From positions 59,954,001 to 60,018,000 of the forward strand of contig NC_043009.1 of NCBI RefSeq assembly GCF_006345805.1: a stretch of DNA of 64,000 bases. Reading direction: 5' to 3'. The notes under the pieces are model-generated. The model was not told the origin of the DNA, did no database searches, and worked only from the letters and a program-made list of their open reading frames with translations. The DNA comes from Octopus sinensis. Taxonomy: Eukaryota. Positions 13,035 to 60,955 of the stretch are shown here, piece by piece. Each line of letters begins with the position of its first letter. Within the stretch, counting starts at the first letter, position 1. The position numbers and the translations under genes were made by a program.

Positions 13035-13416
13035 ACTCTTTTACTTGTTTCAGTCATTTGACTGCGGCCATGCTGGAGTACCGCCTTTAGTCGAGCAAAA
13101 CAACCCCAGGATGTATTCTTTGTAAGCCCAGTACTTATTCTATCGGTCTCTTTTGCCGAACCGCTAAGTTACGGGAACGTAAACACACCAGCATCGGTTG
13201 TCAAGCGATGCTGGGAGGACAAACAGATACACAAATATATACACACACATATACGACGGGCTTCTTCCAGTTTCCGTCTATCAAATCCACTCACAAGGCT
13301 TTGGTTGGCCCGAGGCTATAGTAGAAGACACTTGCCCAAGGTGACACGCAGTGGGACTGATCCCGGAACCATGTGGTTGGTAAGCGGCTACTTACCACAC
13401 AACCACTCCTGCGCCT
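13035..13416 (-). mobile_element. Family A SINE, full length
   Basis: Complete head, core and tail on the minus strand. Confidence 0.92.
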
Positions 13417-19832: not shown

Positions 19833-19974
19833 TGTTAAAAGGTAGATTTTATTATCTATATACACACACATGCACATATAATTACACACATGCATACACA
19901 CACTTACACACACATGCACATATATATCAATCTATCTCACTACCCACCTCTCCATCTATCTATATATATCTACA

Positions 19975-19979
<5 letters not shown>

Positions 19980-20010
<31 letters not shown>

Positions 20011-20460
20011 TGTATGTATGTATGTATGTAGTATGATGTATGTAGTTCATGTATGTATGTATGTATGTAGGATGTATGTATGTAGTATGATGTATGTATG
20101 TATGTATGTATGTATGTATGTATGTATGTATGTATGTATGTATGTATGTATGTATGTATGTATGTATGTATGTATGTATGTATGTATGTATGTACGTATG
20201 TATGTATGTATGTATGTATGCATGCATGCATGCATGCATGCATGTATGTATTATGTATGTATGCATGTATGTCGTAGTATGTATGCATGCATGTATGTAT
20301 GTATGTATGTATGTATGTATGTATGTATGTATGTATTATGTATGTACGTACGTATGTATGTATGTATGTATGTATGTATGTATGTATGTATGTATGCATG
20401 CATGCATGCATGTATGTATGTATGTATGTATGTATGTATGTATATATGTATGTATGTATA
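19980..20460. repeat. (TATG)n/(CATG)n array
   Basis: Directly visible. Confidence 0.95.
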
Positions 20461-22407: not shown

Positions 22408-22494
22408 CGCCCGCAGAGGGACACGAACCCGCGACCCCCATATGTCATGAGAGGACTTAAAAGTCTGATGCTCTACCGATTGAGCTATGCGTGC
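22408..22494 (-). tRNA. tRNA-Lys(TTT): tRNA-Lys(TTT) with a 14-nt canonical-position intron, degenerate (probable pseudogene)
   Basis: GCACGCA TA GCTC AATCGGTA GAGC A TCAGA CTTTTA [AGTCCTCTCATGAC] A TATGG GGGTC GCGGG TTCGTGT CCCTC TGCGGGC G, then TTTT (22398-22401). Mismatches at 3:70, 30:40 and 50:64; A58 has become T. Confidence 0.82.
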
Positions 22495-23791: not shown

Positions 23792-23956
23792 AGGCGTGGG
23801 AGTGGCTGTGTGGTAAGTAGTTTGCTTACCAACCACATGGTTCCGGGTTCAGCCCCACTGTGTAGCACCTTGGACAAGTGTTTTCTACTATAGCCTCGGG
23901 CCGACCAAAGCCTTGTGAGTGGATTTGGTAGATGGAAACTGAAAGAAGCCCATCGT

Positions 23957-24036
<80 letters not shown>

Positions 24037-24258
24037 ATGTTTGGTGTTGTGTCTGTCCCCCCCAACATCGCTTGACAACCGATGCTGGTGTGTTTATGTC
24101 CCCGTAACTTAGCGGTTCGGCAAAAGCGATTGATAGAATAAGTACTAGGCTTACAAAGAATAAGTCCTGGGGTCGATTTGCCCGACTAAAAGGCGGTGCT
24201 CTAGCATGGCCACATTGATTTGACTGAAACAAGTAAAAGAGTAAAAAGAGTAAAAGAG
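23792..24258 (+). mobile_element. Family A SINE, full length
   Basis: Head, core, internal (TA)/(TG) tract and (GTAAAAGA)n tail. Confidence 0.92.
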
Positions 24259-25529: not shown

Positions 25530-25738
25530 GTTCTTTAGTTATTTGACTGCGGCCATGCTGGAGCACCGCCTTTAGTCGAACAAATCGACCCCAGGACTTA
25601 TTCTTTGTAAGCCTAGTACTTATTCTATCGTTCTCTTTTGCCGAACCGCTAAGTTGCGGGGTCGTAAACACAGCAACATCGGTTGTCAAAGCGATGGTGG
25701 GGGAACAAACACAGACACACAAATACATACACACACAA

Positions 25739-25783
<45 letters not shown>

Positions 25784-25885
25784 CGATGGGCTTCTTTCAG
25801 TTTCCGTCTACCAAATCCACTCACAAGGCTTTGGTTGGCCCAAGGCTATAGTAGAAGGCACTTGCCCAAGGCTATAGTAGAAGAC
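25530..25885 (-). mobile_element. Family A SINE, 5'-truncated, with a local duplication
   Basis: Reverse copy; aaggctatagtagaag.cac is repeated at 25842 and 25868. Confidence 0.85.
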
Positions 25886-42239: not shown

Positions 42240-42505
42240 TCTTTTTATGCTTTATTGTTTCAGTCATTTGACTGCGGCCATGCTGGAGAACCGCCTTTAG
42301 TCGAGCAAATCGACCCCAGGACTTATTCTTTGTAAGCCTAGTACTTATTCTATCGGTTTCTTTTGCCGAACCGCTAAGTTACGGGGACGTAAACACACCA
42401 GCATCAGTTGTCAAGTGATGGTGAGGGGACAAACACAGACACACAAACACACATACGAACATACATGCATATATACATGCATACATACATACATACATAC
42501 ATACA

Positions 42506-42722: not shown

Positions 42723-43069
42723 AGGGGTAAAAGTTATTAAAATAATAATTTATACCAGTGGTTAGAATGCATAAAAAAAGTCGGTAGGCATAAATGTTTT
42801 TATGATATATATATGAGTGTATAAAATTTTTGAAACAAAATTAGGCTTTGACACTGCAGTTTGGCATGGAGGAAAGTAATTTCTCGCTTAAAGCAACGCC
42901 TCCTGCAGTCTGCAGAAGGCGCCCTGAGATGATTATGGTGTTATTGCATTATCTTGTTCAAAGCGAGAATTTTAACTTCACAGCACACTGTAATGAAAGA
43001 AATCATTTACGTGTACAAATACGCCCCAAACATATTTGGACTGATCTAAAGTTTAGGCTTATGTAATGT

Positions 43070-43091
43070 ATTGTATTGTACTGTATTGTAT

Positions 43092-43123
<32 letters not shown>

Positions 43124-43226
43124 TGTCTGTCTGTATGTATGTATGTATGTATGTATGTATGCTTGTACGTATGTATGTAATGATAATAGTTGTTTTCTTA
43201 AACATATATATACATAAGTATATATA

Positions 43227-43257
<31 letters not shown>

Positions 43258-43471
43258 ATATACATACATATTTTTCTTACATTTTTCTATTTTTTCCTAT
43301 TAGATCAGGAGGAGGTAGTAAGGTATTAGGGTCTTAATTCGGTTGAGATTAAACATGATAAATTTTGTCCTATTGTTATATATATATATATATACGTATA
43401 TATATGCATGTATATATGTATATAAATATATATGTATATATATGTATGTATATATGTACGTATGTATATAC

Positions 43472-43503
<32 letters not shown>

Positions 43504-43534
43504 GTTATATATATATATATATATATGTGTATGT

Positions 43535-43565
<31 letters not shown>

Positions 43566-43692
43566 ATGTACGTACTTGCATTATATATGCATGTATATAT
43601 GTATATATATGTATGTATATATGTATATATATATATTTTATATATATAATGTATATATATATACATATATAATATATATATATATATATAAA
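43070..43692. repeat. (TATG)/(TA)n arrays, left flank of the Penelope-like element
   Basis: Directly visible. Confidence 0.9.
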
Positions 43693-43902
43693 TAATAAAT
43701 ATTAGGGAATATATCCAAATTTACAGGGAAAAAAAATCAGATTTAGGATTAAATCCAATTTTATAGTAAAATATTATAAAATTTATTTGAGACAAAACCA
43801 CTATTTTGCAAAACAAACAAGGAAAGACTTAATCAATACATAAAATTTAATAAATAGTCAAAAATTTTGTATATTGAGTGTAATACCTCAATTTCGCAAA
43901 TT

Positions 43903-46399
43903 ATGGATTTTACAGGTAAGATAGAACCGCTGTTTTGGGATTCATCTTTGAAAGATATTCCTATTCCTTCTAGAAAGGAATTTATCTTGAAACTTGTTAA
44001 TAATGTTAAAGATTTTATTTCTAGAATTAAATGGAAAGCTTTTTACTATAATTTTTATTTATTTAATGATATTGATAGTAGGAATGATAATTATACCTCT
44101 AAATTTAAATCTAGAAAGGAACCTCCATTTAATAAAGAATTACAATTACTTGAAGATAGTTATGGAAGGTGGTAAAAAATTGAATTCCATAAATACCCAA
44201 ATAGAAATAATGAATATTTAAGGAATTTAGCAATTAAAATTAAAGATTGAGAAATATGGATAATATTATAGTACAATCTGATAAAACGGAATTTATATAA
44301 ATTAGATGTTAAATTATATGATAAACTATTAGGGAAGAAATAATTAAAAAATATAAAATTGTTCCAGATGATATTATTTATAATATTAATAAGGCCTCTA
44401 AAGTAGTAATGTTAAATATGAGTTGGATAATAAACTGAACCTTATGTACCTTTGCACCCCAGATTACTCTTAAAGACCATAAAGATAATTTTTATTCAGA
44501 CCCTAAAGTTAGATTAATTTGCCCATGTAAATCGGACCTAGGTAAATTAAGTAAATTTATTTTAGATAAATATATTGATAAGTTAAATAAACTTAATTAT
44601 TTAAAATTATGGTTTAGTAATAATAATACATTGAAATGGTTTAATAATATTAAGATAAAAATCGTTATAAATTTATTCAAATAGATATAGATAATTATTA
44701 TTCTTCTATTAATGAAATTGGTGTTTAATAAAGCGCTTATTTTCGCAATGAATAAAGTGGGCATGTCACGGGAAGAAGTTAATGTAATTAATTGGCTAGG
44801 AAATCGCTAATTAAATATAAAAATAAATTATGGGCTAGGAATGATACTAGAGATTGTTTTGATATACCTATGGGAGCACCAGATTCTGCACAGGCTACTG
44901 ATTTAGTAGGTATTTTTCTTTTATCTGAACTCCAATTAGAAAATCTTAAGATAGAGGGTGGTTTATATAGAGACGATCTTCTACTAGTTACAAAGAATTG
45001 TACTAATAGGAATCTAGAAGTATATAGAAAAACTATATAGTTTCTTTAAAAGATATGGTTTACGTATTACTATATATAAGGAGAATTATAATGTTAATTA
45101 TTTAGATGTTAACTTTAATCTTATTACAGGTAAAACACAACCATATCATAACTTAATGAGAACCTTAGATATATAATGTTAATAGTAATCACCCATTTTC
45201 TATTAAAAAATCGTTGATTAATAATATAAGTAAACGTATTTCATTACTCTCTTATGATATAGAGATTTTTAATAAACATGCTAATTATTATAATGAGGCC
45301 CTTAGAGGGCAGGTTATAATAAGAATATTAAATTTTATAATATTAGCGATAATGATTTAAATGATAATTTTCGAGATACTTCTAATAATAATTATAATTT
45401 TGTTACGTTTAGTGGTAAAAATAATAGATATTATAAAAAAATAATAAAAATGATAAAAATATAAATAAGATAATAATAATATAATAAATATAATAATAAT
45501 AATATAAATAAGAATAATATAAATAAAAATAAATTTAATAATTATTATAATAATTATATTGATAAATTTAATAATATTAATAATTCCTTAAATGCTGTAC
45601 ATAGATATAATTCTGATAATAATTTTAATAAAATAAAGAATTATAAATATATTTATAATAATGATAATAATAATAAGGTTAATAAGAATAAAATTTGGTT
45701 AATAGTTCCTTATGGAGATCAAGTTAAAACGAATATTATTAAAGAGATTTTAGATGTTATAGAACTATTTATTAGAGATAATCGTAAATATAGAACATTT
45801 TTCTCTTTTAATATAATTTTGGAGTTGGTTACTCTACCACTAATAATGTTGGTAACATTATTTCTTCATTTAATAAATATAAACTGAATAATTTTTATAA
45901 AAAGAAATTATTTGATGATAATAATTAATAATGATAAGACTTATATTAATTGTACATGTAGAGATAAATCTAATGTATATTAAATATAATTGTGATATTA
46001 AAGATGTAGTGTATAAATGTATAGTTACATTACATGATAATAACTTTAAGAATAATAATTACACAAAAGCGGTTTATATAGGTTCTACTTCCTCAAAAAT
46101 AAAACTAAGAATTGCACAACATATGAATCTTTTAAAATAAAAACTTAATCAACTCAACCGGACTTAGTAAGTATATTTGGAGTCTTAAATCACTAAATAT
46201 TAATTATAGTTTAATATGGGAAATAATTTGTAAAACTAAATCATATAATATAGGAGCTAATTGTTGTTATTTATGCTCTAATGAGTTTAAAGAAATTTTA
46301 TTTTATAAGTATGATAATTTACTTAATACTGGGGAGGAGCGCAAAATAAAATGTAGACACAAGTTACTTTACTTATATAATAAGTTTCATGATAAATAG
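43903..46399 (+). pseudogene. Penelope-like reverse transcriptase plus GIY-YIG endonuclease (frameshifted)
   Basis: SLKDIPIPS...RIKWKAF; DHKDNFYSDPKVRLICPCKSDLG; FDIPMGAPDSAQATDLVGIFLL; GLYRDDLL; NYLDVNFNL; SNHP. C-terminus CTCRDKS...VVYKCIV...VYIGSTSSKIKLRIAQH...LSKYIWSLK...CCYLC...KCRH, stop TAG at 46397-46399. Confidence 0.92.
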
Positions 46400-47655
46400 C
46401 AATAATAGTTCCCTTTTAGGTTATTTTAGTTTAGTTTAAATTAGTTTAGATGATATATTTGGTTATGTTGTCTAGGATTTAATTATAGTTAGTCTTTATT
46501 GATATTTCTTTGTTTTAATTAGTTCATTTTTAATGTATATTAATTTAGCAGTTTATGGTACGTTAAAACTTAATAATAATTTATATTAGATTTTTTTATT
46601 TTTTATTTTATTTTTATTTATTTTATTTTATTATGTATTTTTATTTTGCATTTGTTATATGTATTTTGAGGATATATTTATATGTTTTTGGGTGTTATTT
46701 AGTGGTGTTTTTATTGAGTTTTGTATGTATGTGTGAATGTTTAAGATCCCTTTGTTTTTTGTTTTTTATTTGTATGTTGAATTGACAGATTTTATTTGGG
46801 TTTTGTCTTTTATAATGAAGTACACACCCATAACAATTATAAGTGCCCACTTCATTCGTTGTACTTGGGTTTGCATGTGAGCCTCAGCATATGCACCTAA
46901 CGGCCACTCCAGCCCCACATGGATAAATAAACACATACATCCTATTAAAAAAAATAAAAAAAATAATAAAATTAAAAAAAAAAAAAAAAAAAAAATGGGA
47001 GTAATCCCATTCACACCAATTATATGTATACAATTATACACACTTGAATAATACATACTAGCCCTAATATACAGAACATACTAATAATCACCAACTAACC
47101 ACCATCACAATGAACCCACACCCATACAATGACAAAACTCCCCCATACCCTATTTACACCTACATAGTAATCCCAATATATTCTTCCATACATGGACGCA
47201 AGTGCGTGAAGCACATGAACATAATTAGTACGTACAACCCCTAATACACACTAATATATACGTATCAAGCTCGACCTCCACAGTGATAAGTTTACACACA
47301 ATCACACCCAGATGGGTGAATTGCACAACCAGTGAATGCTCACATTTACGGGCGCGATTACATTGTTGCATATATCGAGCCAAAATAGTATGCATATGTA
47401 CATGTGGGGGGTACACGTAAATGAAGTGAGCGTGTACCCCCTGTATTTATACCCGTGCGTGAATATACACATGGAGACTACCACACAGGTACAAATGTGT
47501 TTAGAAATGGGAGCCCCATCACTACACTTAATGTATACTCTCACCCATCCGCACGGATGTGTAAGTGTATCTCCGGTGTTATGTTAGGGCTTATATGTAG
47601 AGTTGTTGAAGGAATGTCGTTGAAATTGTGAATGAATGGGTAGAGTTGGGAATTG

Positions 47656-49231
47656 TAACCGGGTGGTGGACTAGTGTTGCTTGGAATTGTGAATGGATTA
47701 GGTGGGTAATGAGGTAGGCATTGAGTTTGGGTTACTGTAAGTTTTTTGTTAGAGTTATAGGGTGAGCTAAAGCTCATAAATGTATTTAATTGATTTTTCA
47801 TGATAGTTTTTAAAGAATCCATTCATAATAAATTTTTTTAAGTAGCGTTGGTTTGCTACGTGGAAATAGTTTTTAGTTCCATTTATTATATTTCTCCATT
47901 CATACTATGAATGACGTTTACTTTCTATGGCGCGTATTCTTTTTTTACATTAGTTATTTCCATGGTAACGTAATTTTGTTTGGTTTTTTAACGGCTAATA
48001 ATCTAATTTCACTTCATAATTTGTAACTGAATTGTAAGTATGTATTTGATTTATCCTTATGTCATAATGTTATTTTTGATATTCTGGTTAATTACGATGT
48101 ATTTATTGTTGTTTTCATAAGAGTGTTTATGTATATGAGATTGGTTGTGAGTTTTTAATTGTATAATTAATTATTTATATCTGTATGAGTGTGGATGTAA
48201 ATATTGTTGTATATATCGAGTTTTAGTGAGTATGTATATGCGTATATGTGAGGGAGCATATGTATCTGTTTGTGTGTGTGTTTTTGCGTGTGTGTGTGTT
48301 TGTGTGTGAATGTGTATTTGGGTTTGTTATTTAGGATTTGGGATGTATGTGTTAATTTGTCTGTGTGGGGAGGGAGTGGTTTTTGGTGTATAGAGGTTAT
48401 AAGTTAGTATAGGTTTGTGTATAAGTCTTGGGTCTGTGGTTTACGTGTGGGTTTTTTGTGTGTGAATGTTTAGGTTAGGGGGATTGCTATATAAGTTTGT
48501 TATAGGGTTTAGCAAAGGGAGATTTTATCGTATATGCTTTTATGAGTTTTGGTTTATCATGGTTTTTTTTTAGGGTAATTTGTGGTATTTTGTCTATTTT
48601 AGGTGTTGGTTATTTTTTTACATTGTTTCATTCATAATTTTTGAGTGGTGCTCGTTTTGCCACGTGAATAACCGGGTGGTGGACTAGAGTTGTTTGAATG
48701 TGAATGGAATAGTGTAGTAGTGAGGTAGGCATAGAGAATGGGATTGGGTTACTGCAAGTTGTTTGTTAGAGATGCTAAGGTGAGTTAAAGCTCATAAATG
48801 TATATAATGTTTTATGTGGTGTGTAAGTATTTGTTGTATTGTCGAGTTTAGTGAGTATGTATAGGCGTATATGTGAGGGAGTATATGTATCTTTTGTGTG
48901 TGAGTGTTTTGTTGTGTGTGAGTGTGTGTTTGTGTGTGAATGTATATATGGGTTTGTTATTTAGGTTTTGGGATGTATGTGTTAATTTGTCTGTGTGGGG
49001 AGGGAGTGGGTTTTGGTGTATATTGAGGTTTATAAGTTAGTATAGGTATGTGTAAAGTCGTGAGTCTGTGGTTTACGTGTGTGTATTTGTGTGTGAATGT
49101 TTAGGTTAGGGGGTTTACTTTATAGGTTTGTTATAGAGTTTAGCAAAGGAGATTTTATCGTTATATGTTTTTAAAGAGTTTGTTTTAGTAGGGTTTTTTT
49201 TAGGGAATTCGTGGTAATTAGTCTATATTTT
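47656..49231 (+). repeat. Two pairs of diverged direct repeats in the PLE 3' extension
   Basis: R1 at 47656-47790 and 48669-48808; R2 at 48202-48600 and 48829-49231. Confidence 0.9.
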
Positions 49232-49348
49232 CGATATGGATTATATATAGGTTATATGGATTATATACTTATATTTTTTCATTTATACTTTAATTATTTA
49301 AAAGTATTATTTTTATATTTTAAAATTTTGATTTTTTAGATTGGAAGT

Positions 49349-49391
49349 CCACCTGAAGATTGTCGATCAAGACAAGAAACGATTGTAGTGG
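49349..49391 (+). ncRNA. Minimal type I hammerhead ribozyme
   Basis: CCAC-CTGAAGA-TTGTC-gatcaa-GACAA-GAAA-C-gatt-G-TA-GTGG. All core nucleotides are present, stems I and II are perfect, and the predicted cleavage is after GUA at 49387. Confidence 0.85.
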
Positions 49392-49499
49392 CGGTTTTTT
49401 TGACTATTTATTAAATTTATTATGGATTAGTCTTTCCTTGTTTGTTTTGCAAATAGTGGTTTGTCTCAAATAATATTTTATATATATATATATTATATA

Positions 49500-49508
49500 T
49501 ATATGTGG

Positions 49509-49539
<31 letters not shown>

Positions 49540-50583
49540 GTGTTTGTGTGTGTGAGTTTGTGTGTGTGTGTACGTACTTGCATTACATAGATACAGGCAT
49601 ACATACAGAAATAGTTTCGAACAGACATATATACACATGTACGTATATATGCATGTAGGTATATATACACATATAAAGATACTCTTATGACAATAGGGGC
49701 CGGTATGTATTTATATTTATGTGTGAAACCGGTTAGAACTCATCAAAGCTGCAATGGCTAATTACTGAAAGAGCTCCATGCAAATTTCTCATCGATGGAT
49801 TGAAAACCAAAATCATCTCGACTGAGAATTAATATCTCCTTCTGGTTACTATAGCAACGAGATTGGCTAATTTGAACGGATTTTAATAATAAGATAATCG
49901 ATATACTCTGACAAGCAATAACCTTATTGGTCATTTTGGTACCATGATTTCGAAAGGGAAAAACCAGGTATGTATGTATGTATGTATGTATGTATGTATG
50001 TATGTATGTATGTATGTATGTATGTGTGTGTGTATGTGTGTGTGTGTATGTATGTATGTATGTATGTATGTATGTATGTATGTATGTATGCATGCATGTA
50101 TGTATGTATGAATGTATGTATGTATGTATGTAAGTATGCATGCATGTATGTATGTATGAATGTATGTATGTATATAAATATGCATGTATTTACATATTGC
50201 ATACATATGTGTATGTGTGAATATATAAACACATACATACATATATATATATATATACATATAAATACATGTACATATATACATGTATATAGATATGTAT
50301 ACCACGCGTACATACATATATCTACTCATAAGCATATGTGTATATGTGTGTATGTGCGTGTGTGCATGCATACACATATATACATACATGCACATATATA
50401 TCTTTATATAAACTTTGCATGTGTTTGTGTATTATGTATGTATATATAATACATTCGCACATGCACACACATGCATATATATATATACATATATATTATA
50501 TATTACATATAATATTATATATATATATATATATATATAATTATATATATATATATATATACATAATATATATATATATATAC

Positions 50584-50616
<33 letters not shown>

Positions 50617-50665
50617 CTATATATAATATATATAATATATATCTATATACTATATATCATATATA

Positions 50666-50707
<42 letters not shown>

Positions 50708-51000
50708 ATATTATATATATATATTCGTACATACACACATATACACCATTGATATGCAAATGTATTAAATTATCAACGCCGACATACATACTTACGTACA
50801 TACGTACATACATTACATAGATACAGACGTACATATGCAGAAATACTTTCGCACACACACACACACACACGCATATACACATGTACGTATGCACGTATAT
50901 TCATACATGTGTACGTACATATATATATATGTGTCTGTACGTATGCTATGTATGAACGTATGTGCGTAATTATGTATGTATTGATCATTTAATGACATTT
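49500..51000. repeat. (TG)/(TATG)/(TA)/(CA) low-complexity region
   Basis: Directly visible, with short unique interruptions. Confidence 0.85.
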
Positions 51001-51454
51001 TGTAGTGAATTTAGCCTCCAATTTTGTTATTAAAACTTTCCCCTAACGGCCTTACACACCAACATGTTTGGCTCGCTTGTTCAGTGAGATCCTTATCAGA
51101 CTTATTTCACAACCAAAGAGTCATGTGTACTATTGTACTAGCATTATGATTATATTAATGCTATGAGGTTTTGTTTCGCCTCCTCATCTTCTGTGTTCAA
51201 ATCCCACCGAGATCTATTCTGCCTTTCATTCTCTCGGCGTCCATGAATATAATACAAAGGATCGATGATATCGACCAATTCTTTTGATCCAGTTTCTGGC
51301 CTTGCGCTGAAAGCACAAATTATACACGGTCTCGGCTTGGTAGTATCGTTAAAACGTCTGACAAAATGCAAGGTTAGTATTCCTTGTGCCATTTTTCGTT
51401 CCGTGTTCAAATCCTGCCAAGGTCAACTTTGCGTTTTAAGTTTTTCGGGGGTTA

Positions 51455-51657
51455 CTCTTTCACTTGTTTCAGTCATTTGACTGTGCCCATGCTGGAGCAC
51501 CACCTTTTAGTCGAGCAAATCGACCCCAGGACTTATTCTTTGCAAGCCTAGTGCTTATTCTATCGGTCTCTTTTGCCGAACCGCTAAGTTACGGGGGACG
51601 TAAACACACCAGCATCGGTTATCAAGCGATATTGGGGGGACAAACACAGACACACAA

Positions 51658-51688
<31 letters not shown>

Positions 51689-51825
51689 CATATATACGAC
51701 AGGCTTCTTTTAGTTTCTGTCAACCAAATCCACTCACAAGGTTTTGGTCGGCCCGAGGCTATAGTAGAAGACACTTGTCCAAGGTGCCACGTAGTGGGAA
51801 TGAATCCGGAACCATGTGGCTGGCT
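51455..51825 (-). mobile_element. Family A SINE
   Basis: Near-complete reverse copy. Confidence 0.9.
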
Positions 51826-56869: not shown

Positions 56870-57515
56870 GATAGCCTGTCCATAATATTGCAATTTTTGG
56901 TCGCCTACTTCTTTTAAGAGACTCCACGTGTTCTAATTTAGTATAACGCCAACTGTTCTGCCCTTTTCCTTACTGTTCAGCTACTTATTAGGATTCTTCT
57001 ATAAGAGCAACCTTGAAAAATCCTCTGTCTTTAGTCTAACAGTTTTCTGAAGAGTTTAGTATTCAGATCCATACATTGCTATTGAAAATATCAAAGTGTG
57101 CTGCAATCTTAGCCTGGTAACTTTACATACTGATGGATTTTTTTTCCTAAATGCAGTTTAACGAGATAACAGAGGATTTGGCTGTTTGCAAGATTTCTTT
57201 CAACTCTTTGCTGTTATCACATTGATTTGTAATAAATCTTCTAAGATATTGTCGGATGAATGATTGATTTAGGTTCCTCAAAATTAATGAGTTGATCATA
57301 TTCTTCGCTTGTTTCTTTCCTTTTCTTCATCAAAATCCTCAGTACTTCTTCGCTACTAACCATAAGGACGGTGTCATCAGCATATCTAAAATCGACAACC
57401 ATTCTTCCACCGATCTTAATTGTATCTCCAGAACTTTCTAAAACTTTCTTCATTACTCTTTTTGCAGAGATGTTAAGCAGAGAAAAAGAAAGGGCGTATC
57501 CTTGTCGCACTTCGG
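56870..57515 (-). pseudogene. RTE-clade LINE reverse transcriptase relic
   Basis: RQGYALSFSLLNI...IKIGGRMVVDFRYADDTVLMVSSEEVL, and downstream LIFSIAMYGSE..TL, match the RTE pattern GVRQGCILSP/NLRYADDT/YGCETWT. Confidence 0.8.
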
Positions 57516-58199
57516 TTCAGCCCCAAGCTATTCAGTGAAGTTTATGTAAGTTTGAACAGCTGCAAATGAAGTGATATTAATATTTACATAAAATATTAAG
57601 GAGAGTGCTGTTTCTATCGACATTAATCAAAATTTGTCATAAATGAATGTGTCAGATGTGTACAAGGAACGCAATATAAAAAAACAAACAAACAAACAAA
57701 AAAAACAATTCAAAAAATCAGACTGCAATGGATCAAAAGGGAAAAAGATTTTTAAAAAAAGCAGAATAGCACCATGAGCTTGATCGACCATAGGTGGCAA
57801 GGAAATATCACCAACACTTTAAGAAAGGCAGTCAATAGCAGTCAATGAACTGGTGAACACAGTAATATCAACACCTGAATAAGTGTCGGTGAGGAAAACA
57901 ACGTTAATTCTTAAAAATAAAACAAGTGGAGACCTCTTAAACAACAGGTTTTTTTTAGCCCAATGACAACAACCTACAGAATCCTAACACTCATATTCTA
58001 AAACTGGCTGCTTGTTGACGTAAAGAGCAATAACAATTTAACAGAGAAATACAAAGGGTACCGGGAAGATAAAGGATATACTTACATGCATTCTAAAACA
58101 AACTCATTCCGACATAAAGAAATAATTGAAATATTTTATTATTCATATATTATTCATATTCGTATTACGTAGGAGAAATTACAGTAAACACGAGAATTA

Positions 58200-58439: not shown

Positions 58440-58492
<53 letters not shown>

Positions 58493-58622
58493 GCATACGT
58501 ATATACGACGGGCTTCTTTCAGTTTCCGTCTACAGACACTTGCCCAAGGTGCCACGCAGTGAGACTGAACCCGGAACCATGTAGTTCGTAAGCAAGCTAC
58601 TTACTACAGCCACTCCTGCGCC
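58200..58622 (-). mobile_element. Family A SINE with an internal deletion
   Basis: Reverse copy lacking part of the core. Confidence 0.88.
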
Positions 58623-60389: not shown

Positions 60390-60955
60390 TTGGGTTGTCC
60401 GGAAAGTTCGTGTCGATTTATAGTAGATTACTTTTCAACTTATTTTAGAATATGGTTGAGTCCATAAAATAGGATTTGACTACACCTCCATTTAGAGCAC
60501 AGTTTAAGTTATCTTTTCGTGGAAGAAGGTTTATGTTCCTATAACTTGTGTTAATTTTGTAACCCTTTAAAATGAAAGATAAGAAAGTTCATTTTCGACA
60601 CTTGATGCTTTGGGAACCAGACAAAAATTGCTGCAGCTCAGCTGGGATGTGTTACCCCACCCTCCATATTCACCAGATATTGCTCCTTCGGATTTCCATT
60701 TATTCAGGTCTCTGCAGAATAGTCTTAATGGTAAAAATTTCAATTCCTTGGATGACGTAAAAAGATACCTTGATGAATTCTTTGCCATGAAACCACCTCA
60801 ATTCTGGGAAGAGGGTATTTTCAAGTTAAAGGAAAGATGGAGGCGCATTGTGAAACAAAATGGTTCATATTTAGTTGATTAAAAATGTAATGGCAAGTAT
60901 TTATTGATCTTTTTCTTTTCTTTAAAAATCGGCACGAACTTTTTGGACAACCTAA
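60390..60955 (+). mobile_element. Internally deleted mariner (566 bp)
   Basis: TA-flanked ~30-bp TIRs ttgggttgtccggaaagttcgtgtcgattt / reverse complement ttaggttgtccaaaaagttcgtgccgattt. MKDKKVHFRHLML is fused to ...HPPYSPDIAPSDFHLFRSLQN...ERWRRIVKQNGSYLVD*. Confidence 0.92.

What the first reader, a model, noticed from the sequence alone, without database searches (positions are those of the whole stretch)
46860..49060. Long-range inverted repeat whose transitions all create G-U pairs on the sense RNA
Seen: 46870-46945 is an inverted copy of about 48340-48410 and about 48970-49040. In a by-eye alignment of ~75 nt, the roughly ten transitions all go one way: C in the reversed arm versus T, and A versus G (for example ctgaggctcaca versus ttgaggtttata). 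Every one is therefore a G-U wobble on the + strand RNA and an A-C mismatch on the - strand. Inference: a 1.4-2.1 kb-range RNA duplex maintained on the sense transcript under strand-specific C-to-U/T pressure. ADAR A-to-I editing fixed by reverse transcription would give the same pattern.
Basis: partly seen in the sequence, partly recalled or inferred. Interest (0 to 1): 0.7.

Follow-up and report, generated by a model that had tools for sequence, protein, structure and literature searches.

The report
Inverted copy of a C-poor repeat
A real 75-base inverted repeat in an octopus-like genome pairs with G-U wobbles on one strand only because the right-hand repeat copies have almost no C on that strand, not because an RNA duplex is being preserved.

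Summary
46868-46944 is an inverted copy of 48339-48412 and 48969-49045 (z=13.5 against dinucleotide shuffles). All 8 and 11 transitions go one way: C or A in the reversed left arm, T or G on the right.

The interpretation mostly fails. The right arms lie in two tandem copies, B1 and B2. These sit in a 1.7 kb tract (47581-49300) whose + strand has only 3-9 % C. A paralog in DIRECT orientation (47362-47474 against 48203-48321) cannot pair, yet shows the same bias, 22:2. Changes that break pairing are not depleted: 9 transversions and 3 gap columns against 11 transitions. So the G-U wobbles are a by-product of strand-skewed composition.

The cause of the skew is unresolved. I favour strand-specific C-to-T loss before the B1/B2 duplication. 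In a perfect hairpin in the normal-composition copy, all 8 C of its G-C pairs are T in B1. The reverse polarity cannot be excluded: that would be an A-to-G edited, polyadenylated retrocopy, or a natively skewed family.

The context is an octopod genome. The locus lies beside a decayed reverse-transcriptase-like retroelement, inside a 5.7 kb block bracketed by 100-bp inverted repeats.

The parts
46868..46944 (+). Left arm (L1): an inverted copy of part of the B unit with normal base composition (A .30, C .29, G .15, T .25 for 46820-46945)
   Evidence: z=13.5
46946..46995 (+). A-rich tail (88 % A; the last 22 nt are pure A) directly after L1. An AATAAA lies about 15-20 nt upstream. This looks like the 3' end of a polyadenylated retrocopy, but no target-site duplication was found.
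   Evidence: read directly from the sequence
48339..48412 (+). Right arm in copy B1
48969..49045 (+). Right arm in copy B2
48173..48642 (+). B1, a tandem repeat copy (C 4.0 %, G 29 %, T 48 %)
   Evidence: 84 % identical to B2 over 490 columns
48798..49278 (+). B2, a tandem repeat copy (C 2.9 %). It shares 12 residual C with B1; 7 are B1-only and 2 are B2-only.
47656..47790 (+). A1, a direct repeat of A2 (81 %)
48669..48808 (+). A2, a direct repeat of A1
47362..47474 (+). P: a DIRECT-orientation paralog of B1 48203-48321 and B2 48831-48951 with normal composition. It serves as the control that cannot pair.
   Evidence: z=8.9 plain, 14.0 with C and T collapsed
47581..49300 (+). C-poor, G+T-rich tract of normal sequence complexity. 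GC skew is +0.45 to +0.82, and both boundaries are abrupt.
46996..47190 (+). G-poor, C+A-rich tract (G 5.6 %). It may be an inverted copy of the downstream half of the B unit, but the homology is only tentative.
   Evidence: joint z about 6; alone z=2.2
47191..47580 (+). Core of normal composition that contains P. It holds a 17-bp hairpin at 47402-47446 (-24.9 kcal/mol, z=-4.7). All 8 C of its 8 G-C pairs are T in B1.
43921..46360 (+). Decayed reverse-transcriptase-like retroelement reading frame with frameshifts and stops (GC 21 %, C 8.4 %). It is homologous along its whole length to 759-806 aa octopod proteins.
43762..43864 (+). Left member of a 100-bp inverted repeat that brackets the whole 5.7 kb block
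   Evidence: 90-92 %
49397..49497 (-). Right member of the bracketing inverted repeat

Best explanation
The left arm is a short inverted fragment of a repeat family that lies around it in both orientations. The right-hand copies (A1, B1, A2, B2, inside 47581-49300) have almost no C on the + strand. Where a less skewed copy has C they have T, and less consistently G for A.

When such a copy is compared with an inverted, unskewed copy, every transition must appear as G-U on the + strand RNA and as A-C on the - strand. The wobble pattern is therefore a by-product of strand-asymmetric composition. It is not the trace of selection on an RNA duplex. This part is shown.

The rest is inferred, at about 0.5. 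The skew arose by deamination-type loss of C (C to U/T), with some A to G, on one strand of the ancestral B unit while that strand was single-stranded nucleic acid. It may have been a single event, or a cumulative pressure on the sense strand of the neighbouring C-poor retroelement lineage. It happened before the tandem duplication that made B1 and B2.
For: 1. The bias does not depend on pairing. The direct paralog P against B1 gives 16 C>T and 6 A>G against 1 T>C and 1 G>A (p=4e-5). P against B2 gives 23:2.
2. Pooled over the three comparisons, C in the normal copies is kept at 5/58 sites and is T at 44. G and T are each kept at 84 %, and A at 54 % (Fisher p=6e-21 for C against G).
3. The C-poor tract is 1.7 kb of normal-complexity sequence. 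It is the only stretch of that length in the 64 kb window.
4. Nine SINE copies in the window have balanced transitions. B1 against B2 is also balanced.
5. B1 and B2 share 12 of 19 and 14 residual C, so the skew predates their duplication.
6. Polarity: the core hairpin has 8 G-C pairs, and all 8 C are T in B1. B1 still folds, through G-U pairs, on the + strand only (-12.5 against -1.5 kcal/mol). Eight specific T>C changes at the observed 27.5 % rate have probability 3e-5. Eight C>T at 76 % have probability 0.11.
7. The adjacent retroelement frame is also C-poor on the + strand (8.4 %, against 21.8 % in an intact relative).
Against: Polarity is not proven. If the C-poor copy is taken as ancestral, an ordinary strand-symmetric substitution process is not rejected: T>C 44/160 against A>G 9/58, p=0.08.

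Loss of about 76 % of all C with no sequence-context preference exceeds anything described for APOBEC-type editing.

The retroelement frame keeps 104 of 135 family-conserved residues, with only 5 simple C>T or G>A type replacements. So its C-poverty is native and not a hypermutation event.

The A>G excess is absent in the third, weaker comparison (12:8). No other family members could be retrieved.
Confidence: 0.7

Rival explanations
1. Reversed polarity. The family is natively G-poor on its C+A-rich sense strand. The normal-composition pieces (L1 with its A tail, and P) are retrocopies of RNAs that were hyper-edited by ADAR (A to I, read as G), with some C to U, before reverse transcription.
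For: L1 ends in AATAAA plus a 50-nt A-rich tail on the + strand. On that same strand it carries G at 7 sites and T at 4 sites where the B sense strand has A and C, with none in reverse.

The implied editing level is 27.5 % of A (44/160). That is within the ADAR hyper-editing range (own knowledge).

The edited fraction by 5' neighbour is U 41 %, A 38 %, C 25 %, G 1/5. This follows the known ADAR preference order.

An inverted partner lies within 1.4-2.0 kb and gives a stable duplex. The host is an octopod, a group known for heavy A-to-I editing (own knowledge).
Against: The neighbour trend is not significant (p=0.35). No target-site duplication flanks L1.

P would have to be edited on the opposite chromosomal strand. 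The unedited - strand RNA at the hairpin does not fold at all (-1.5 kcal/mol), so it is a poor ADAR substrate.

This reading leaves unexplained why the family would natively have 3-4 % G. The hairpin argument favours C as the ancestral state.
Confidence: 0.15
2. Native skew without any editing. The units are a minisatellite-like, G+T-rich, strand-asymmetric repeat, partly built from degenerate (GT)n and (GTAT)n. The normal-composition pieces are simply diverged relatives drifting back towards equilibrium composition.
For: From the C-poor copy's point of view the per-base transition rates are similar: T>C 27.5 %, G>A 18 %, A>G 15.5 %, C>T 2/9.

The window is full of GT, GTAT and ACAT microsatellites. 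Parts of B are (GT)n-like.

The neighbouring retroelement frame is natively C-poor on the same strand.

Strong strand asymmetry is common in tandem repeats (own knowledge).
Against: The tract has the sequence complexity of ordinary DNA (compression 0.41-0.43).

Neutral drift would have to create a perfect 17-bp hairpin by 8 specific T>C changes (p about 3e-5).

The composition boundaries at about 47190 and 47580 are abrupt.
Confidence: 0.25
3. One reading: a 1.4-2.1 kb-range RNA duplex (or a hairpin-RNA/siRNA precursor) on the + strand transcript, kept by selection that tolerates only changes producing G-U.
For: The + strand duplex is much more stable than the - strand one: -85/-91 against -61/-65 kcal/mol. 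Shuffled partners give -37 ± 5. All transitions are of the G-U type.
Against: The same bias appears in a direct paralog (22:2) and over 1.7 kb without any partner.

Twelve of 23 differences between the arms break pairing, so ts:tv (1.2) is not raised over the neutral SINE value of 2.4.

Under such selection the left arm would also drift towards G+T on the + strand, but it is C+A-rich.

There is no covariation to examine, and no evidence of transcription.
Confidence: 0.05
4. An in-situ process centred on the normal-composition core (47191-47580). Divergent transcription with R-loops, or a replication origin, exposes the + strand on the right and the - strand on the left to deamination.
For: The sign of the skew flips across the core: GC skew is -0.68 at 46996-47190 and +0.45 to +0.82 at 47581-49300. 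The core is GC 44 % with near-expected CpG. The direction of the flip matches non-template or lagging-template exposure (own knowledge).
Against: The magnitude is far beyond known transcription or replication skews. The flip is equally explained if the left tract is an inverted copy of the same unit. A further C-poor + strand tract (46400-46819) lies to the left of the G-poor one, which breaks the symmetry.
Confidence: 0.05

Closest known systems
APOBEC-type DNA editing of retroelements fixed in vertebrate genomes (Knisbacher & Levanon 2016, PMC4866542)
   Same: Paralogous repeat copies differ by a cluster of one transition type on one strand. The complementary type is depleted more than 10-fold (44 C>T against 2 T>C).
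   Different: About 76 % of all C are converted with no dinucleotide motif. The sense strand of the B units is not established. The host is an invertebrate, and that study found no such editing in 19 invertebrate genomes. Molluscs do encode AID/APOBEC-like deaminases (PMC5889660).
ADAR hyper-editing of long inverted-repeat dsRNA
   Same: An inverted repeat 1.4-2 kb apart can form a stable duplex. Under reversed polarity the main change is A>G on the sense strand of a polyadenylated copy.
   Different: This is DNA, so fixation needs reverse transcription. The dominant class is C>T if the right copies are the derived ones. The direct paralog shows the same bias.
Repeat-induced point mutation (RIP) of fungi
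   Same: Near-saturating C-to-T change in duplicated DNA, with runs confined to one strand (own knowledge).
   Different: The host is an animal. There is no CpA preference beyond expectation (19/44 against 36 % window-wide). G on the same strand is untouched.
Single-strand deamination skew, as on the mitochondrial heavy strand
   Same: Joint C>T and A>G enrichment on one strand, giving a G+T-rich and a C+A-rich strand (own knowledge).
   Different: The context is nuclear. No mitochondrial reading frames appear under genetic code 5.
Penelope-like and other GIY-YIG retroelements with direct or inverted terminal repeats
   Same: The neighbouring frame has a YRDD box and a C-terminal GIY-YIG-like motif. 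The block is bracketed by 100-bp inverted repeats.
   Different: Pfam does not recognise the frame or five of its full-length relatives. No hammerhead ribozyme was found. The family assignment rests on motifs recalled from memory.

Membership tests
Selected long-range RNA duplex / hairpin-RNA locus | Compensatory (double) changes that keep pairs across copies or species | not testable with these tools
   There is only one left arm. B1 and B2 differ in the arm only by one T/G site and small indels. No orthologous loci could be retrieved.
Selected long-range RNA duplex / hairpin-RNA locus | Deficit of changes that break pairing (transversions, indels) relative to neutral DNA | tested here: not met
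   11 transitions against 9 transversions and 3 gap columns. SINE copies give 155:64. Fisher p=0.20, in the wrong direction.
Selected long-range RNA duplex / hairpin-RNA locus | Directional bias confined to the paired segment | tested here: not met
   The direct paralog P gives 22:2. The C-poor tract is 1.7 kb long.
APOBEC-type edited retroelement | At least 10 clustered mismatches of one transition type between same-family copies, with the complementary type depleted | tested here: met
   16 C>T against 1 T>C (P against B1). Pooled 44 against 2.
APOBEC-type edited retroelement | The change reads as G>A on the element's sense strand | tested here: inconclusive
   The A tail of L1 implies that the C+A-rich strand is sense, which would fit. 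However, the B units lie on the same strand as the neighbouring retroelement frame, which would give C>T on sense.
APOBEC-type edited retroelement | A preferred dinucleotide context at edited sites | tested here: not met
   5' neighbours of converted C: G 14, A 13, C 9, T 8. 3' neighbours: A 19, G 10, C 8, T 7.
APOBEC-type edited retroelement | The host encodes a DNA cytidine deaminase of the AID/APOBEC kind | not testable with these tools
   The literature reports such genes in molluscs but does not mention octopus (PMC5889660).
ADAR-edited retrocopy | A>G cluster on the sense strand of a copy that bears retroposition marks | tested here: inconclusive
   L1 has AATAAA and an A tail, and 7 G-for-A sites on that strand. 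No target-site duplication is present, and the polarity is unknown.
ADAR-edited retrocopy | 5' neighbour preference U≈A>C>G | tested here: inconclusive
   U 41 %, A 38 %, C 25 %, G 1/5; chi-square p=0.35.
Repeat-induced point mutation | C>T and G>A in duplicated DNA with a CpA preference, in a fungal host | tested here: not met
   The host is an octopod. G is kept at 84 %. CpA is not enriched.
Penelope-like retroelement (for the neighbouring frame) | Reverse transcriptase followed by a GIY-YIG endonuclease, plus a hammerhead ribozyme in the terminal repeats | tested here: inconclusive
   There is full-length homology to 759-806 aa octopod proteins. Pfam gives no RT or GIY-YIG hit. Rfam finds no hammerhead. 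The motifs were recognised by eye only.

The most novel reading that the evidence does not exclude
The B units are the germline-fixed product of a near-saturating, strand-specific deamination event or pressure in a cephalopod: C to T at about three quarters of sites, plus A to G at about a quarter. The reverse reading is that L1 and P are ADAR-edited RNAs written back into the genome by a retroelement reverse transcriptase. Either would be an editing footprint in invertebrate germline DNA of a kind so far described only for vertebrate APOBEC targets.
Probability: 0.3. Interest if true: 0.7.

Novelty: new member of a known kind. Interest (0 to 1): 0.3.

Why it matters
As found, this is a caution. 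Inverted copies of any strand-skewed repeat will mimic a 'G-U-only' RNA duplex, so that signal needs a direct-orientation control.

If the skew proves to be a deaminase footprint, it would show nucleic-acid editing leaving heritable marks in an invertebrate genome. The host group is already exceptional for RNA editing, and the idea could be tested genome-wide with a C/T-collapsed repeat search.

Tried and rejected
1. The T-rich tract 46400-46870 as a further direct copy of B: z is only 2.2-2.9, so it was not accepted.
2. Homology between the retroelement frame and the reverse complement of the C-poor tract, using a G/A-collapsed alphabet: only non-specific A-rich matches.
3. One-off hypermutation of the retroelement frame: rejected. 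104 of 135 conserved residues are intact, and only 5 replacements are of simple C>T or G>A type.
4. A nuclear copy of mitochondrial DNA: no long frames under genetic code 5.
5. A known RNA family or hammerhead ribozyme in 43000-51500: only sub-threshold microRNA-like hits on microsatellites.
6. The 3' flank of the Octopus sinensis relative (L004) as an outgroup: no homology to the B units.
7. Finding the genome or other family copies: exact-protein look-ups failed. Two metagenome pattern scans found nothing. The last protein search gave one 67 % hit.
8. A transition-tolerant Smith-Waterman over the whole region gave long, noisy, uninformative alignments.
9. The inverted tract 46996-47360 as a robust third paralog: significant only when taken as a whole (z about 6), not by halves (z 2.2 and 1.7-3.4). 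It is treated as tentative.

Full report
**What the window is.** The 64 kb are repeat-rich animal nuclear DNA. They hold a mariner transposase remnant, many microsatellites and at least nine copies of a roughly 370-bp SINE. That SINE also occurs in an Octopus sinensis chromosome segment (L004) at 72-87 % identity. A reverse-transcriptase-like frame next to the finding has its best relatives in Octopus sinensis (XP_029653623.1) and Argonauta hians. I take the host to be an octopod. The exact species and assembly could not be found.

**Check of the observation.** 46904-46942 is 85 % complementary to 48341-48379 and to 48971-49009, which lie 1398 and 2028 nt away. BLAST and MAFFT extend the match to about 46868-46961. 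Against dinucleotide shuffles the score has z=13.5. In a global alignment of the reversed left arm with the B2 arm there are:
- 54 matches
- 7 C>T and 4 A>G
- no T>C and no G>A
- 9 transversions and 3 gap columns

With the B1 arm the transition count is 8:0. The binomial p-values are 0.001 and 0.008. The + strand duplex is predicted at -85 and -91 kcal/mol, the - strand duplex at -61 and -65, and shuffled partners at -37 ± 5.

**Anatomy around it.** The two right arms sit in two tandem copies, B1 (48173-48642) and B2 (48798-49278). These are 84 % identical. Each is preceded by a shorter direct repeat, A1 (47656-47790) and A2 (48669-48808). All of 47581-49300 has a + strand with 3-9 % C, 22-34 % G and 30-48 % T. 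Its compressibility is that of ordinary sequence, so it is not a microsatellite, and it is the only tract of that length in the window. To the left, in order, lie:
- a core of normal composition (47191-47580)
- a G-poor tract (46996-47190)
- a 50-nt A-rich run (46946-46995)
- the left arm, inside 126 nt of normal composition (46820-46945)
- a T-rich, C-poor tract (46400-46819)

These segments are described.

**The decisive control.** 47362-47474 in the core is a paralog of B1 48203-48321 and B2 48831-48951 in DIRECT orientation (z=8.9, or 14.0 when C and T are collapsed). It cannot pair with them on any RNA. It nevertheless differs by 16 C>T and 6 A>G against 1 T>C and 1 G>A (p=4e-5).

A third, weaker comparison uses the reverse complement of 47191-47360 against B2. 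Its joint z is about 6, but by halves it is only 1.7-3.4. It gives C>T 21:1 but A>G 12:8.

Pooled over the three comparisons, C in the normal-composition copies is kept at 5 of 58 sites and is T at 44. G and T are each kept at 84 %, and A at 54 % with 26 % to G. SINE copies in the same window have balanced transitions, and so do B1 and B2 against each other. The one-way transitions therefore belong to the C-poor copies whatever their orientation. The G-U appearance follows arithmetically when the partner happens to be inverted.

**Against a selected duplex.** Twelve of the 23 differences between the arms break pairing. The ts:tv ratio is 1.2, not raised above the 2.4 of the SINEs. The left arm is C+A-rich on the + strand, although G-U-tolerant drift would push both arms towards G+T. 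No covariation can be assessed. Conditioned on the right arm's composition (79 % G+T), 11 of 11 has p=0.08.

**What made the skew.** B1 and B2 share 12 residual C, against 7 and 2 private ones, so the skew predates their duplication. The polarity of the change is the open point.
- With the normal copies as ancestor, the process is extremely asymmetric: C>T 44/58 against G>A 9/92, p=7e-17.
- With the C-poor copies as ancestor, a strand-symmetric process is not rejected: T>C 44/160 against A>G 9/58, p=0.08.

One internal clue favours C as ancestral. The core holds a 17-bp hairpin (47402-47446, -24.9 kcal/mol, z=-4.7) with 8 G-C pairs. All 8 C are T in B1, which still folds through G-U pairs on the + strand (-12.5) and not on the - strand (-1.5). 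Creating that stem from the B state needs eight specific T>C changes (about 3e-5 at the observed rate). Losing it needs eight C>T (0.11).

Against a single enzymatic event, three quarters of all C are converted with no context preference. That is more than is described for APOBEC editing (PMC4866542). That study also found no such editing in 19 invertebrate genomes. AID/APOBEC-like genes do exist in molluscs (PMC5889660).

**Reversed polarity.** The left arm ends with AATAAA and an A-rich tail, like a polyadenylated retrocopy. On its own sense strand it has G at 7 sites and T at 4 sites where the B sense strand has A and C. Read this way the main change is A>G at 27.5 % of A. The 5' neighbour order U≈A>C>G matches ADAR, but not significantly (p=0.35). 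No target-site duplication is visible. The direct paralog would have to be edited on the other strand.

**Context.** 43921-46360 (+) is a decayed frame covering residues 1-745 of a 759-aa octopod protein. It has a YRDD box and a GIY-YIG-like C-terminus, which I recognised by eye. Pfam does not recognise it or its relatives. Its + strand has 8.4 % C, against 21.8 % in an intact relative. However, 104 of 135 family-conserved residues are intact, and only five replacements are of simple C>T or G>A type. The frame is therefore natively C-poor and not hypermutated.

A 100-bp inverted repeat (43762-43864 and 49397-49497, 90-92 %) brackets the frame and the whole finding. Whether the B units belong to this element is unknown. 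If they do, a standing C-to-U pressure on the element's sense strand would be the economical reading: unconstrained in non-coding parts, filtered by selection in the frame.

**Verdict.** The duplex-maintenance interpretation is not supported. The strand-specific transition asymmetry is real, but it is a property of the repeat copies. Its cause can only be settled with the rest of the family or with orthologous loci, and neither was reachable here.

Noticed in passing
43921-46360 (+): Decayed, very AT-rich (GC 21 %) reverse-transcriptase-like frame with a YRDD box and a GIY-YIG-like C-terminus. It is homologous to 759-806 aa octopod proteins that have no RT or GIY-YIG Pfam hit; one source names a relative 'GATA zinc finger domain-containing protein 14-like'.
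   Followed up: partly
43762-43864 and 49397-49497: A 100-bp inverted repeat (90-92 %) brackets a 5.7 kb block that holds the retroelement frame and the whole finding. (TA)n runs lie near both outer sides. No other copy occurs in the window.
   Followed up: partly
47402-47446: A 17-bp hairpin (-24.9 kcal/mol, z=-4.7) with an 11-bp perfect core, in the normal-composition core. The homologous B1 segment keeps it only as a G-U hairpin on the + strand.
   Followed up: yes
6510-6799, 7300-7690, 13047-13407, 23801-24230, 25534-25871, 40727-41049, 42257-42492, 51466-51823, 58454-58614: Copies of a roughly 370-bp SINE with an internal (TA)n/(TG)n stretch, shared with Octopus sinensis. Copy 13047-13407 has 8 A>G and 0 T>C against the consensus.
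   Followed up: partly
22408-22494 (-): Rfam tRNA hit (39 bits) that ARAGORN does not call. It may be a tRNA-derived repeat head.
   Followed up: no
976-1575 (-) and 60583-60879 (+): Mariner/Tc1-type transposase remnants. The closest named relatives are spread over Octopus, lizards and fishes.
   Followed up: partly
46580-46647 and 46925-46995: A T-rich tract and an A-rich tract flank the left arm and are 70-81 % complementary. The match is low-complexity, so it may be meaningless.
   Followed up: no
2350-2950, 4300-5700, 19950-20300, 31300-31550, 49968-50189: Long tetranucleotide-type microsatellites (GTAT/ACAT-like in 4300-5700, 19950-20300, 31300-31550 and 49968-50189; a G-free C/T/A unit in 2350-2950) that produce the other strong GC-skew peaks in the window.
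   Followed up: no
57244-57516 (-): Short frame with a reverse-transcriptase-like YADD motif. It is probably another retroelement remnant.
   Followed up: no
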